Below are positions 38,953-41,677 of a DNA stretch of 64,000 nucleotides, one piece after another. The stretch's first letter is position 1. The number at the start of each line of letters is the position of its first letter. The position numbers and the translations under genes are program-made. The stretch covers positions 124,001-188,000 of IMG/VR virus record IMGVR_UViG_3300045125_000071; one strand, written 5' to 3'. The notes beneath the pieces are model-generated. The model saw only the letters and a program-made list of their open reading frames with translations. It was not told the origin of the DNA and did no database searches.

Positions 38953-39043
38953 TTGTTCATGGTGTTTTATGTTTTGCCCCCGTCATACAAATGGCGGGGG
39001 TTTTTTATTGTCGCTACTGGAACTGTTCAGGCCCACCAGTCGG

Positions 39044-39213: not shown

Positions 39214-39681
39214 ATGAATTTGAATGTCGCACAAAAGTTGGCAAACGACCTATTGATTGAACATGGTCTTGTTCAGAAAGGTTGGTACTTTCAATTTGAT
39301 AATAGCAAAAGGCGTTTCGGTGTTTGCAAATATGGTAAAAAGGTTATTGGTCTTTCACGGGAATTGACGTTGCTCAACGACGTTGTAAATGTTAAAGATA
39401 CTATCCTGCACGAAATAGCCCACGCCATTGCAGGACGAGGTGCTGGACATGGTTGGTTGTGGAAACAAGTTTGCATCCGCATCGGGGCAAAGCCTGAAAG
39501 GTGTTATTCAAGCAATGAGGTCAATACGCCACTACTGAAATATCAAGCAACGTGTGGTGCTTGTGGTGCGCTGCATCAGAAAGCAAAAATGCACAAAAAG
39601 GGTGTGAGAAGGTCTTGCAAATGTCAAAGCGGAAAAGATTGGGATAGTAGGGTATTACTTGAATATAAGGCATATTATTGA
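39214..39681 (+). CDS. SprT-like zinc metalloprotease
   Basis: RRFGVC...IGLS...DTILHEIAHA...GHG..WK.V...IG. Confidence 0.85.
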   Translation: MNLNVAQKLANDLLIEHGLVQKGWYFQFDNSKRRFGVCKYGKKVIGLSRELTLLNDVVNVKDTILHEIAHAIAGRGAGHGWLWKQVCIRIGAKPERCYSSNEVNTPLLKYQATCGACGALHQKAKMHKKGVRRSCKCQSGKDWDSRVLLEYKAYY

Positions 39682-39938
39682 AAAAAACTTATTATCTTTA
39701 CATTCTAAAAACACAATCACCATATATTATGAAATACATATTTAGAGGAAATGTTATATTTGAATACATTCCTGAAAAACAGGAAGTGATTCAGAATAAA
39801 ATACATCAAGTTATACCTGCATTTGATTATTGTAGAATGATACCTGAAGATTACAAATTGTTGGGTGAGTTTTTTGATAAAGCATATAGACACACCAAAG
39901 GAGAAGAAATTGTTTTAAATGATATTATAGTAAGTTAA
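39678..39938 (+). CDS. hypothetical protein
   Basis: ORF track; TTG start overlaps upstream stop. Confidence 0.5.
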   Translation: MKKTYYLYILKTQSPYIMKYIFRGNVIFEYIPEKQEVIQNKIHQVIPAFDYCRMIPEDYKLLGEFFDKAYRHTKGEEIVLNDIIVS

Positions 39939-39944
39939 AAGTAC

Positions 39945-40056
39945 AGTCAGGTGGCGAAACGGTAGACGCACGGAAGGCATTCCGATTCTCCCTTGTTAGG
40001 AGGCATCCAAAAGCAAGGGCATAGCATGAATACAGGTTCGAATCCTGTCCTGACTA
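39945..40056 (+). ncRNA. tRNA-like RNA lacking a canonical anticodon loop
   Basis: Acceptor AGTCAGG/CCTGACT; D-arm GCG-AAACGGTAGA-CGC; T-arm ACAGG-TTCGAAT-CCTGT; CGGAA-GGCA-TTCCG (4-nt loop) plus a long extra arm. Confidence 0.75.
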
Positions 40057-40215
40057 CTTAAAAAATAAACTTATGATACTTGTTAAAGAAAATAAGGGAT
40101 TTGCTGTTTACTTTGATACCAATACCCAAACGTATTTGGTTTTCAAAGATGGCGGATTCTTAATAGGAAACAAATACAAGTTCAGTGATGTAAAATCTTA
40201 TTTGGATTGATATTC

Positions 40216-40294
40216 AGTCAGGTGGTGTAATGGTAGCACACGGAGAAGAACTCACCAAAAGGTAGAGCCGACACGGAGTATAGGTTCGATTCCT
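40216..40294 (+). ncRNA. 5' part of a second tRNA-like element, interrupted in the T-arm
   Basis: AGTCAGG-TG-GTG-TAATGGTAG-CAC ... ATAGG-TTCGATT-CCT; matching 3' part at 41401-41423. Confidence 0.75.
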
Positions 40295-40323
40295 CGCGCA
40301 GGCCCTCATCAAAACACACGCAA

Positions 40324-40467
40324 ATGAACACGCACACGATTGAGGTATCCATCCCATCTAATGTTGACCTTGAGCATACATTTTATGCGGTGTTGGATGC
40401 GCTTTGCGCTTCCGACAATGTTACACAGGGGAGGTTGAATTGGTTTTACAAACCATTCGAAAACTAA
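40324..40467 (+). CDS. small hypothetical protein (47 aa)
   Basis: MNTHTIEVSIPSNVDLEHTFYAVLDALCASDNVTQGRLNWFYKPFEN after an AAAACACAC leader. Confidence 0.55.
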   Translation: MNTHTIEVSIPSNVDLEHTFYAVLDALCASDNVTQGRLNWFYKPFEN

Positions 40468-40537
40468 ATTTACAAACCATTCGAAAAAAGAAAAGAGAAA
40501 AGTTCGGTTTAGACCTATAATGTGCAATGACCTCCGC

Positions 40538-40577
40538 GCCCTGCAGTGGTTGAGCGGTTCGATTCCGCAGTGGGGCC
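40538..40577 (+). ncRNA. armless tRNA-like minihelix (acceptor stem + T-arm)
   Basis: GCCCTGC/GTGGGGC 7-bp stem, AGTGGTTG linker, GCGG-TTCGATT-CCGC. Confidence 0.5.
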
Positions 40578-41169: not shown

Positions 41170-41369
41170 TGGCACATAACACTCAAATATTCGCATTCGA
41201 GACGTGGAGCAATGGAGGAATCCAAACGTCAGCATTTTATGAGGGGGATGAAGCAATGAATTTCATTGCTCGCCACGAGCAAAGTGGCACATTCGCTACA
41301 TTGCACGTCTTCAAAAATGAGAAAGAGGCCCTACAGGCTTACGAAGATTTTCGTAGCGAGGGGAACTGA
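41169..41369 (+). CDS. hypothetical protein
   Basis: 66 aa, coupled start overlapping the inverse core site. Confidence 0.55.
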   Translation: MAHNTQIFAFETWSNGGIQTSAFYEGDEAMNFIARHEQSGTFATLHVFKNEKEALQAYEDFRSEGN

Positions 41370-41510
41370 CCCCTCCCCCCGACCTGCAATGGTTTCAGCG
41401 AGGTTCGATTCCTATCTTGGCTACTCGTTCCGTCTAATCAACGGATAATATGCCCCAACCGAAAGGTTGGGGTTTTTTGTTTCTGGCGCTTCCTGCTGTT
41501 CTTCTGGAAA

Positions 41511-41550
41511 GATTTTGTCTAGTTTTGAAATGGTAAAACTAGACGAAATC
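41511..41550. repeat. cassette palindrome 15
   Basis: N10. Confidence 0.95.
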
Positions 41551-41677
41551 CAACAGGTACCAGCCAGGCGACGGGCTTGGGCAACCTGTTAACGGGCTTT
41601 AACATACAATTAACAACAATTATTTTGATAGCGATTATACGCAACATATCTTTGCATAAACAATTAAATCATAAGCC

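What the first reader, a model, noticed from the sequence alone, without database searches (positions are those of the whole stretch)
39945..40056. Family of tRNA-shaped RNAs with no anticodon loop
Seen: intact acceptor, D and T arms. The anticodon position holds a 5-bp stem with only a 4-nt loop (CGGAA-GGCA-TTCCG), followed by a ~47-nt extra arm (CCCTTGT...GCAAGGG). The sister element at 40216 has the same AGTCAGGTGG start and a different hairpin there, also without an anticodon loop. No encoded CCA. Inference: non-decoding tRNA mimics, possibly RNase P/Z processing signals, decoys for tRNA-sensing or anticodon-nuclease defences, or integration targets.
Basis: partly seen in the sequence, partly recalled or inferred. 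Interest (0 to 1): 0.6.

Follow-up and report, generated by a model that had tools for sequence, protein, structure and literature searches.

The report
Anticodon-less tRNA-shaped phage RNA family
The flagged 112-nt element is a real tRNA-shaped gene with no anticodon loop, one of at least 16 in this T4-like giant phage and about 200 in freshwater phage metagenomes that keep a nearly invariant tRNA-Leu-like frame while the middle is swapped like a cassette; its function is unknown.

Summary
Window 39945-40056 folds as described: a 7-bp acceptor, a 3-bp D stem, a T arm, a 5-bp stem capped by a GGCA tetraloop where the anticodon arm should be, and a 30-nt extra arm.

It belongs to a large family. 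About 16 complete copies lie in this 251-kb T4-like phage. About 200 distinct copies lie in at least 120 IMG/VR contigs and 18 MAG contigs.

All copies share one frame: AGUCAGG/CCUGACU, A73, a tRNA-Leu-type D arm and a T arm. Their middles are unrelated and vary in length.

Only 7 of 201 hold any canonical anticodon loop. An intron reading fails its controls.

The elements carry the same flanking signals as the true tRNAs of these phages (U-1, encoded C74, no CCA). The phage encodes a CCA-adding enzyme.

Helices covary. An ortholog in an unrelated phage keeps both hairpins of the element through compensatory changes.

Two phages with 98% identical terminases differ only in the middle of their element. 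This is a clean cassette swap.

Best reading: tRNA-processed, non-decoding RNAs whose frame is a scaffold and whose middle is a variable payload. Expression and function are not shown. The closest known relative in kind is T4 species 1 RNA, whose function is also unknown.

The parts
39945..40056 (+). Element A: complete anticodon-less tRNA-shaped gene (112 nt to discriminator A73; C74 at 40057)
   Evidence: Fold. Part of the family. Ortholog L301 is 87.5% identical.
39945..39951 (+). Acceptor 5' strand AGTCAGG (pairs with 40049-40055)
   Evidence: 100% paired, with 6 of 7 pairs changed on both sides among 10 relatives.
39954..39969 (+). D arm of tRNA-Leu type (3-bp stem; U8, A14 and G18G19 kept)
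   Evidence: Position-wise conservation in 201 elements: T8 95%, A14 86%, GG in the loop 90%.
39971..39984 (+). Hairpin at the anticodon position: 5-bp stem plus GGCA tetraloop
   Evidence: The loop is GGCA in 9 of 10 relatives and GACA in 1. Stems covary. G-C changes to A-U in ortholog L301.
39990..40019 (+). Extra arm (8-bp outer stem) enclosing a second GGCA-capped hairpin (39999-40008) within the invariant motif AGGAGGCATCC
   Evidence: The motif is invariant in 10 relatives. The outer stem changes C-G to U-A in L301.
40032..40048 (+). T arm (ACAGG TTCGAAT CCTGT)
   Evidence: 3 of 5 pairs changed on both sides among relatives.
40049..40057 (+). Acceptor 3' strand CCTGACT, discriminator A73, encoded C74 (no CCA)
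   Evidence: A73 87%, C74 98% in 170 elements. The same signature is seen in 189 true tRNAs.
40216..40306 (+). Element B: degenerate copy (5' frame, D arm and T-loop word; no matching 3' acceptor strand)
   Evidence: (z +1.62).
40531..40577 (+). Element C: T-loop-bearing fragment, not tRNA-shaped
41370..41425 (+). Element D: T-loop-bearing fragment related to C
38976..39010 (+). Strong intrinsic terminator that closes the preceding unit
41452..41481 (+). Strong intrinsic terminator that ends the unit holding A-D and six small ORFs
39678..39938 (+). 86-aa ORF ending 6 nt before A. Its homologs in other phages are also flanked by family members
40073..40210 (+). 45-aa ORF starting 17 nt after A (tight packing, same strand)

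Best explanation
Element A is a gene for a non-decoding, tRNA-shaped small RNA. It belongs to a phage family built on one tRNA-Leu-like frame.

Proposed mechanism:
1. The element is transcribed inside an operon of small ORFs.
2. It is cut out and finished by the tRNA maturation machinery. RNase P cuts at the U/C-1 | A+1 junction, the 3' end is trimmed to the encoded C74, and a CCA-adding enzyme completes the CCA. The phage encodes such an enzyme.
3. The product is a stable L-shaped RNA whose acceptor, D and T parts form an invariant handle for processing, stability and elbow/acceptor recognition.
4. The region that in a tRNA forms the anticodon and variable arms is replaced by a structured payload. 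In A this payload is two GGCA-capped hairpins.
5. Payloads differ between copies. Each is conserved as its own 'species'. They are exchanged between phages by recombination within the constant frame.

Shown here: the shape, the family, the absence of anticodon loops, helix covariation, tRNA-like flanking signals and the cassette swap.

Inferred: transcription, processing, CCA addition, and that the payload is the working part. What the payload binds is unknown.
For: Shape:
- One search gives the fold of A.

Family:
- 17 matches in the phage.
- About 16 complete copies, mostly at genome 102-108 kb beside true tRNAs.

Frame and middle:
- The middles share no word; no 8-mer occurs in more than 6 of 201. 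They form 173 clusters.
- The D arm was not part of the search pattern, yet it is conserved.
- In 1.49 Mb of phage loci, ARAGORN-canonical tRNAs have diverse acceptors. Of 285 non-canonical tRNA-shaped hits, 164 carry AGTCAGG.

No anticodon:
- 7 of 201 elements hold a canonical anticodon loop, against 3.2 +/- 1.8 in shuffles.
- The Rfam tRNA model matches members only by skipping the anticodon arm.

Processing signals:
- The elements have U-1 in 81%, A73 in 87% and C74 in 98%.
- 189 true tRNAs of the same loci have U-1 in 71% and C74 in 100%.
- A CCA-adding enzyme with an HD domain lies at genome 118043-119515.

Structure under selection:
- Acceptor and T helices are 100% paired, 9 pairs change on both sides, and 0 of 500 shuffles reach this.
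- The stems of the GGCA hairpin covary.
- L301 shows compensatory changes in both of A's hairpins.
- Middles fold better than shuffles (mean z -0.56, p 2e-11).

Cassette behaviour:
- L042 and L067 have terminases 98% identical. Their flanks align, and only the middle, about 72 versus 59 nt, is unrelated.
- A's ortholog L301 sits in a locus with no other similarity to this 251-kb phage.

Operon setting:
- Terminators lie at 38976 and 41452, and none lies between the ORFs and A.
Against: - No RNA evidence for A. A metatranscriptome holds small contigs over neighbouring parts (39440-39591, 40171-40576, 41306-41564), but only the shared 3' frame of A matched, and DNA carry-over cannot be excluded.
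- One RNA contig runs unbroken across element B and both flanking ORFs.
- The structure signal of the middles is modest; 30% have z above 0.
- No target, partner protein or shared motif was found for the payloads. There is no antisense match to the phage's own genome beyond chance, and no protein family accompanies the elements in more than 16 of 148 loci.
- A scaffold used only by generic tRNA enzymes would not need an invariant acceptor sequence, so the sequence-level constancy of the frame is not explained by this reading alone.
- The family was collected with the 3' 21-mer, so the invariance of that part is by construction.
Confidence: 0.5

Rival explanations
1. Decoy or sponge. The working part is the constant frame (acceptor end, elbow), which soaks up a host factor that recognises tRNAs. 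Candidates are a defence toxin acting on the acceptor or CCA end or on the T arm, or a tRNA-binding sensor. Loss of the anticodon loop keeps the decoy out of translation and away from anticodon nucleases, and the middle is free to vary.
For: - The frame is constant at the sequence level across phages whose terminases are only 31-47% identical.
- Many copies occur per genome.
- Turnover is rapid, as is typical of arms-race loci.
- Phage tRNAs are known to counter tRNA-targeting defences (PMC10264068, found).
Against: - The frame is not a copy of any tRNA in 185,579 species genomes; only 18 MAG contigs match, and they carry the same odd elements. It therefore does not mimic a particular host tRNA.
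- Middles are kept within 'species' by compensatory changes. A free-to-vary spacer would not show this.
Confidence: 0.2
2. Leucine-accepting non-ribosomal tRNA-like RNAs. The frame keeps what bacterial LeuRS needs, so the RNAs are charged with leucine. They then serve as aminoacyl donors for a transferase, or they titrate LeuRS or EF-Tu.
For: - The frame keeps A73 (87%), U8, A14, G18G19, an intact T loop and a regular acceptor helix.
- In bacterial LeuRS these are the identity elements, and the anticodon arm is dispensable for charging (PMC2377443).
- The variable parts of the family are the anticodon and variable arms.
- Canonical tRNA-Leu(UAA) genes with this or a near-identical frame exist.
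Against: [quoted passage not shown]
- Some members with the same frame look like tRNA-Lys(UUU) or tRNA-Ile.
- No aminoacyl-transferase gene was seen among the neighbours scanned (only a few proteins were scanned).
- This reading does not explain why payloads are conserved and diverse.
Confidence: 0.1
3. Punctuation marks. The tRNA shape serves only as an RNase P / 3'-processing site that cuts polycistronic phage transcripts and sets the stability of the flanking mRNAs. The excised RNA is a by-product.
For: - The elements are packed tightly between co-oriented small ORFs (6 nt after one stop, 17 nt before the next start) inside a terminator-bounded unit.
- A copy lies 28 nt upstream of terL in several phages.
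Against: - A minimal acceptor-T hairpin would suffice for this role.
- Conserved D arms, conserved payload species and compensatory changes in payload helices are not needed for it.
- Arrays of elements lie back to back with little coding sequence between them.
Confidence: 0.1
4. Decaying tRNA genes or selfish DNA: pseudogenes derived from a duplicated phage tRNA-Leu gene, or small mobile DNA that spreads through tRNA-gene-directed recombination or homing, with no role for the RNA.
For: - Partial and chimeric copies exist. Element B is one. Genome 101816 is a 5' duplicate of the 105040 element. A 3'-only piece lies at 102396.
- A homing endonuclease gene lies in the tRNA cluster.
- There is horizontal spread into unrelated contexts.
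Against: - Decay would erode the frame and the middle alike. Here the frame, the D arm and the flanking processing signals are kept at 80-100%, and payload helices evolve by compensatory change.
Confidence: 0.08
5. Ordinary tRNAs interrupted by short introns that are spliced out to give a normal anticodon arm.
For: ARAGORN with the intron option calls A tRNA-Ser(GGA) with a 20-nt intron.
Against: - The same option of 300 controls with shuffled middles an intron tRNA.
- A split-anticodon model fits 17 of 201 elements against 13.8 +/- 3.5 in shuffles.
- The proposed intron would destroy the hairpin whose stem covaries in 10 relatives.
- From general knowledge, bacterial and phage tRNA introns are group I introns of about 200 nt or more.
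Confidence: 0.02

Closest known systems
Phage T4 species 1 RNA (rnaC; with rnaD, the two small stable RNAs of the T4 tRNA region)
   Same: - Encoded by a T4-type phage next to tRNA genes and co-transcribed with them.
- About 140 nt, with a T arm carrying the universal T-loop word next to a terminal helix.
- No anticodon loop.
- Function unknown after 50 years (PMC3014915; PMC12685909).
   Different: - No sequence similarity beyond the 11-14-nt T-loop word.
- T4 has one such RNA, without a tRNA-Leu-type D arm.
- Here one frame is reused by dozens of payloads, in many unrelated phages, with cassette exchange.
Engineered 'tRNA scaffold' for expressing recombinant RNAs (anticodon arm replaced by a cargo RNA; from memory: Ponchon and Dardel 2007)
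   Same: Same architecture: acceptor, D and T parts kept, cargo inserted in place of the anticodon arm. The tRNA enzymes process and stabilise the chimera.
   Different: That scaffold is man-made. Here the design occurs naturally, in arrays, with conserved payload species. The insertion region also takes in the variable arm and sometimes the D loop (genome 102095 element).
Bacterial Y RNA-like YrlA (Rfam RF02553)
   Same: A non-decoding RNA with a tRNA-like module (T arm, D-like arm, acceptor-like stem). It is also found in some phages.
   Different: In YrlA the ends of the RNA form the Ro-binding stem and the tRNA-like part is internal. Here the ends form the acceptor stem. The Rfam score is 13 bits against a threshold of 69 on a close relative.
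Gammaherpesvirus MHV68 TMERs (viral tRNA-like RNA fused to pre-miRNA hairpins; from memory)
   Same: A viral tRNA-like module, not used in decoding, serves as a promoter and processing handle for attached functional hairpins. There are several copies per genome.
   Different: TMERs belong to a eukaryotic virus. Their payload hangs off the 3' end and is released by tRNase Z. Here the payload sits inside the cloverleaf.
tmRNA
   Same: A tRNA-like acceptor and T domain, with the anticodon arm replaced by other structure.
   Different: The elements have no tag reading frame, no pseudoknot ring and no G3:U70. ARAGORN finds no tmRNA. Rfam tmRNA matches only the T loop at about 7 bits. The elements are 70-150 nt rather than 250-400 nt.

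Membership tests
Canonical tRNA (Rfam RF00005) | 7-bp acceptor stem, D arm with G18G19, T arm with the TTCGA loop | tested here: met
   Fold. Conservation. Covariation.
Canonical tRNA (Rfam RF00005) | 5-bp anticodon stem with a 7-nt loop (Y32 U33 NNN R37) | tested here: not met
   A has a 4-nt GGCA loop. Only 7 of 201 family members hold such a loop anywhere.
Canonical tRNA (Rfam RF00005) | Detected by ARAGORN default or by Rfam at gathering score | tested here: not met
   No call for A. Eight array members pass 29 bits only through local alignment that skips 17-57 nt at the anticodon arm.
Intron-containing tRNA | Removal of one contiguous insert restores a canonical anticodon arm more often than chance | tested here: not met
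   17 of 201 against 13.8 +/- 3.5 in shuffles. ARAGORN -i% of shuffled-middle controls.
Intron-containing tRNA | Spliced RNA observed | not testable with these tools
   Only contigs of one metatranscriptome were at hand, and none covers A's middle.
tmRNA | Tag reading frame, pseudoknots, alanine identity pair G3:U70 | tested here: not met
   ARAGORN finds none. Pair 3:70 is U-A. Rfam tmRNA scores 6.8 bits against 47.
T4 species 1 RNA (rnaC) homologs | Sequence homology to T4 rnaC | tested here: not met
   blastn-short finds only the T-loop word, 11-14 nt.
T4 species 1 RNA (rnaC) homologs | tRNA-like stable RNA without an anticodon, encoded with tRNA genes of a T4-type phage | tested here: met
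   Gp23 and Gp20 hits. The array lies beside tRNA-Val, -Met, -Arg and -Pro. Stability of the RNA was not tested.
YrlA / Y RNA-like | Ro-binding stem formed by the RNA ends, with an internal tRNA-like module; Rfam RF02553 | tested here: not met
   13 bits against 69 on relative L233. No hit on A. The ends form the acceptor stem.
Substrate of bacterial LeuRS (tRNA-Leu identity set) | A73, U8-A14, G18-U55, G19-C56, regular acceptor helix | tested here: met
   for the nucleotides. The identity set is taken from PMC2377443.
Substrate of bacterial LeuRS (tRNA-Leu identity set) | Proper orientation of the long variable arm; actual leucylation | not testable with these tools
   Needs an aminoacylation assay or a charge-sensitive tRNA-seq.

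The most novel reading that the evidence does not exclude
Freshwater phages run a natural 'tRNA-scaffold' system. One invariant tRNA-Leu-derived frame acts as a universal expression, processing and recombination adaptor. A community-wide pool of hundreds of structured RNA payloads is shuffled between unrelated phages by recombination within the frame. The payloads would be protein-binding or RNA-binding effectors, for instance inhibitors of host defence or of host translation. This would be an RNA counterpart of gene-cassette systems, and it would finally give a function to the T4 species 1 class of RNAs.
Probability: 0.3. Interest if true: 0.9.

Novelty: new variant of a known kind. Interest (0 to 1): 0.75.

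Why it matters
Phage tRNA-like RNAs that cannot decode have been known since T4 species 1 RNA and have never been explained. This family offers what T4 could not:
- hundreds of natural variants on one frame;
- clear orthologous 'species' with covariation;
- natural swap experiments between near-identical phages.

That makes the question testable. One can compare payloads, pull down their partners, and relate payload species to hosts and defence systems.

There is also a practical point for annotation. Standard tRNA finders either miss these genes (ARAGORN default, Rfam at threshold) or mislabel them as intron-containing or odd-anticodon tRNAs. tRNA counts and codon-usage arguments for such phages are therefore unreliable.

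The invariant 25-nt frame ends may be a recombination hot spot that shapes mosaicism in these genomes.

Tried and rejected
- Other genetic code: stop-free frame statistics under TGA, TAG or TAA read-through give no sign of recoding. The longest frame is unchanged for TGA and TAG. Table 11 was kept throughout.
- Known RNA family: Rfam gives nothing for A and only local tRNA matches for relatives.
- Cultured phages: no record of 50,697 holds the frame; only 24-of-25 chance matches to T arms of unrelated tRNAs were found.
- Host tRNA mimicry or attachment site: no isolate genome holds the frame.
- Guide or antisense RNA against the phage's own genome: only 11-14-nt chance matches.
- Shared motif in the payloads: none.
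- Constant protein partner encoded nearby: none. The most frequent neighbours are a Terminase_3 large subunit (16 loci) and DUF932 (14 loci).
- Orthologs of A by short patterns: searches gave only chance or ribosome-binding-site-like matches. One search gave the true ortholog L301 and the GGCA subfamily.
- Expression: reads were laid once. The result shows presence in an RNA library of parts of the operon, but not of A, and it cannot separate RNA from DNA carry-over.
- Not used: the large protein searches, structure prediction and complex prediction. No claim here rests on a protein.

Full report
**The element itself**

- a 7-bp acceptor stem (AGUCAGG with CCUGACU);
- a 3-bp D stem with a 10-nt loop, as in type II tRNAs;
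- one unpaired base;
- a 5-bp stem closed by the four bases GGCA, starting at tRNA position 27;
- five unpaired bases;
- a 30-nt arm that encloses a second small GGCA-capped hairpin;
- twelve unpaired bases;
- a perfect T arm;
- discriminator A.

ARAGORN with default settings finds no tRNA or tmRNA in the whole window. Rfam finds nothing at gathering score, and nothing but a 7-bit T-loop match at E up to 10.

**The genome**

The window is bases 124001-188000 of a 251-kb IMG/VR virus record, judged 75% complete.
- It is a T4-type phage, with a Gp23 capsid protein and a Gp20 portal.
- Its G+C content is 31%.
- It shows no sign of stop-codon recoding.
- It encodes a CCA-adding enzyme with an HD domain at genome 118043-119515.

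**A family within the phage**

The last 25 bases of the element recur 16 more times, all on the same strand, mostly at genome 102-108 kb.

Pairing 5' and 3' frame words gives about 16 complete elements of 76-147 nt. Several broken copies also occur:
- a 5' duplicate at 101816;
- a 3'-only piece at 102396;
- elements B, C and D of the window.

The array lies just upstream of the phage's true tRNA genes (Val, Met, Arg, Pro). A homing endonuclease gene lies among those tRNA genes.

The Rfam tRNA model reaches its threshold on eight array members. It does so only by local alignment that jumps over 17-57 nt where the anticodon arm should be.

The 'sister' at window 40216 has the 5' strand, a D arm and a T-loop word. 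It has no complementary 3' strand and no stable fold, so it is a degenerate copy.

**A family across phages**

It also occurs in 18 contigs of metagenome-assembled genomes, many of them binned as freshwater Bacteroidota. It occurs in no isolate genome and in none of 50,697 deposited phage genomes.

Upstream of 140 of 163 matches lies an exact AGTCAGG at 50-270 nt. In all I collected 201 distinct elements, with a median length of about 106 nt.

The 3' word is invariant by construction of the search. Three other features are independent observations:
- The D arm was not searched for, yet it is conserved: T8 95%, G10 87%, A14 86%, GG in the D loop 90%.
- The discriminator is A in 87%.
- The middles share nothing. 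No 8-mer occurs in more than 6 elements, and there are 173 sequence clusters among 201 elements.

I ran a crude scan for tRNA shapes over 1.49 Mb of these phage loci:
- 233 ARAGORN-canonical tRNAs have all kinds of acceptor stems.
- Of 285 non-canonical hits, 164 carry AGTCAGG and about 20 carry one-base variants.

The anticodon-less state is therefore tied to this frame. A few members with the frame do look like working tRNAs: Lys-UUU in three phages and Leu-UAA. The D arm is that of bacterial tRNA-Leu. The family probably derives from a phage tRNA-Leu gene.

**No anticodon, no intron**

Only 7 of 201 elements hold a 5-bp stem with a Y-U-NNN-R-N loop anywhere in the middle, against 3.2 +/- 1.8 in dinucleotide shuffles.

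A model with an intron after position 37 fits 17 elements, against 13.8 +/- 3.5 in shuffles.

ARAGORN's intron option does call A 'tRNA-Ser(GGA) with a 20-nt intron'. It also of 300 copies of A with a shuffled middle, so the call carries no weight.

**The structure is under selection**

A search with the motif inside A's extra arm gave two results.

First, it gave one true ortholog, L301, 87.5% identical over 128 nt. Relative to A:
- the stem at the anticodon position has changed G-C to A-U;
- the outer stem of the extra arm has changed C-G to U-A;
- the loops are kept.

Second, it gave a wider subfamily of eight further distinct sequences. They share the GGCA-capped hairpin at positions 25-27 onward and the invariant motif AGGAGGCAUCC. 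Most also have an extra T-arm-like hairpin between the two.

In these ten sequences:
- The acceptor and T helices are paired in all 150 cells. Nine pairs change on both sides. No shuffle of 500 and no slid register comes near this.
- The stem under the GGCA loop uses many different pair types at each position, while the loop is GGCA in nine sequences and GACA in one.

Other payload 'species' of two to four members show the same pattern of conservative change. As a set, the middles fold somewhat better than shuffles (mean z -0.56, n = 164, p 2e-11).

**Cassette behaviour**

Three small phages, L040, L042 and L067, have large terminase subunits 98-99% identical. Each has a family member just upstream of that gene.

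L042 and L067 align through the upstream region, the first 26 nt of the element, the T arm, the acceptor strand, a second tRNA-shaped gene and the terminase gene. The roughly 72 and 59 nt between the D arm and the T arm are unrelated. L040 differs again.

The converse also occurs. A's ortholog L301 lies in a 15-kb locus that has no other similarity, even at protein level, to the whole 251-kb phage.

Homologs of the 86-aa ORF that precedes A are flanked by family members in other phages too, but with different middles.

So the same payload occurs in unrelated contexts, and different payloads occur at the same place. Exchange by recombination within the two constant frame segments is the simplest account. 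This is an inference; no breakpoint mapping was done.

**Setting and processing signals**

A lies in a unit bounded by two strong intrinsic terminators at 38976 and 41452. The unit holds six small co-oriented ORFs. A begins 6 nt after one stop codon and ends 17 nt before the next start codon. It must therefore be cut out of a longer transcript if it is to exist as a small RNA.

The flanks of 170 elements show T at -1 (81%), A at -2 (72%), C at position 74 (98%), then A/T-A-A, and never CCA. The 189 canonical tRNAs with other acceptor stems in the same loci show the same signature: T-1 71%, C74 100%. The anticodon-less genes thus keep the signals that the true tRNA genes of these phages keep.

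That is the main argument that they pass through RNase P, 3' trimming and CCA completion. A itself has C at -1 and C74.

**Expression**

One metatranscriptome of an aquatic sample holds short contigs over 39440-39591, 40171-40576 and 41306-41564. Over A, only the shared 3' frame matched, in contigs that continue into other family members. DNA carry-over cannot be excluded. Transcription of A is therefore not shown.

A freshwater DNA run piles up on the frame (summed depth 416). This reflects the many family members in that sample.

**What it most likely does**

The frame keeps the acceptor helix, the elbow and the end signals. These are the parts read by RNase P, the CCA-adding enzyme and, for tRNA-Leu, the synthetase. 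The parts that vary are the anticodon and variable arms.

For bacterial LeuRS, A73 and the U8-A14, G18-U55 and G19-C56 core are the identity set, and the anticodon arm is dispensable for charging (PMC2377443). Leucylation is therefore possible but untested.

Three observations point to the payload as the working part:
- Payloads are individually conserved.
- They are numerous within one genome.
- They turn over between close relatives.

I rank 'tRNA-framed payload RNAs' first (0.5). The other readings follow:
- a frame-based decoy (0.2);
- a leucyl donor or sponge (0.1);
- pure mRNA punctuation (0.1);
- decay or selfish DNA (0.08);
- intron-bearing tRNAs (0.02).

These readings are not all exclusive.

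The sequence-level invariance of the acceptor stem is not explained by scaffold use alone. It may reflect a sequence-specific partner, or homogenisation by the same recombination that moves the payloads.

**Comparison with what is known**

The nearest thing in kind is T4 species 1 RNA (rnaC). It is a 139-nt stable RNA with a T arm and a terminal helix, encoded next to the T4 tRNAs. Its role is still unknown (PMC3014915, PMC12685909). It shares only the universal T-loop word with this family.

The architecture equals the engineered tRNA scaffold (from memory). YrlA, tmRNA and herpesvirus TMERs resemble it in part and fail the membership tests listed.

Seven full-text searches of the paper library (one search failed) found no description of this family. 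A survey of candidate structured RNAs in IMG/VR mentions 'tRNA-like' candidates only in general terms (PMC10690425). That library is incomplete, so prior description elsewhere cannot be excluded.

**Limits**

- Counts are lower bounds, because the scans were capped.
- The collection was seeded with the 3' frame word.
- The crude tRNA-shape scan has false positives.
- The host is inferred only from MAG bins.
- No wet evidence exists for transcription, processing, charging or function.

Noticed in passing
G000 genome 111703-112383 (+), outside the window (locus L129:11703-12383): A homing endonuclease gene (phrog_314, E 5e-37) lies between tRNA-Arg and tRNA-Pro. This mirrors segB in the T4 tRNA cluster and could help move tRNA-region DNA between phages.
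   Followed up: partly
G000 genome 118043-119515 (-), locus L133: A phage-encoded CCA-adding enzyme (PolyA_pol head, RNA-binding domain and HD domain) lies 10 kb from the array. It fits genes that encode C74 but not CCA.
   Followed up: partly
window 39997-40008 and nine related loci (alignment A1): The motif UAGGAGGCAUCC is invariant in ten relatives. It contains a perfect AGGAGG and resembles the complement of the 16S rRNA 3' tail, and it folds as GGA-GGCA-UCC. Whether it binds the ribosome or a protein is open.
   Followed up: no
window 40531-40577 and 41370-41425: Two T-loop-bearing fragments share CCTGCA(R)TGGTT...AGCG(A)GGTTCGATTCC. They are the only two copies in the genome and do not fold as tRNAs. 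They may be remnants of another tRNA-like gene type.
   Followed up: partly
L042:13390-13460 and L067 (alignment A2, columns about 190-270): A second kind of anticodon-less tRNA-shaped gene with another frame (GGCTATG...CATGGCC). Both the D arm and the anticodon arm are simple stems capped by 4-nt loops. It lies directly after the AGTCAGG-type element.
   Followed up: no
window 38157, 38976, 41452, 42007 (+): Four strong intrinsic terminators share one design: a CCCC-rich stem, a CGAAAGG loop region and a T run. They look like a repeated terminator module that bounds small operons.
   Followed up: no
G000 genome 14384-17656 (-), locus L130: A 1090-aa protein has weak ribonucleotide-reductase insertion-domain, intein-splicing and LAGLIDADG matches. 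It is probably an intein-bearing RNR.
   Followed up: no
G000 genome 102095-102223; locus L036: Some family members carry their extra sequence inside the D loop rather than at the anticodon position, so the frame tolerates inserts at more than one site.
   Followed up: partly
window 39214-39681 (+): A 155-aa ORF at the head of the operon matches SprT-like phage proteins (phrog_1006; 91% nucleotide identity over 44 nt to Pseudomonas PAK_P1-like phages).
   Followed up: no
all phage loci fetched: Every one of 189 canonical tRNA genes in these phages encodes C74 followed by A/T-rich sequence, and none encodes CCA. This is an unusually uniform 3' signature that may mark a shared host group or processing route.
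   Followed up: partly
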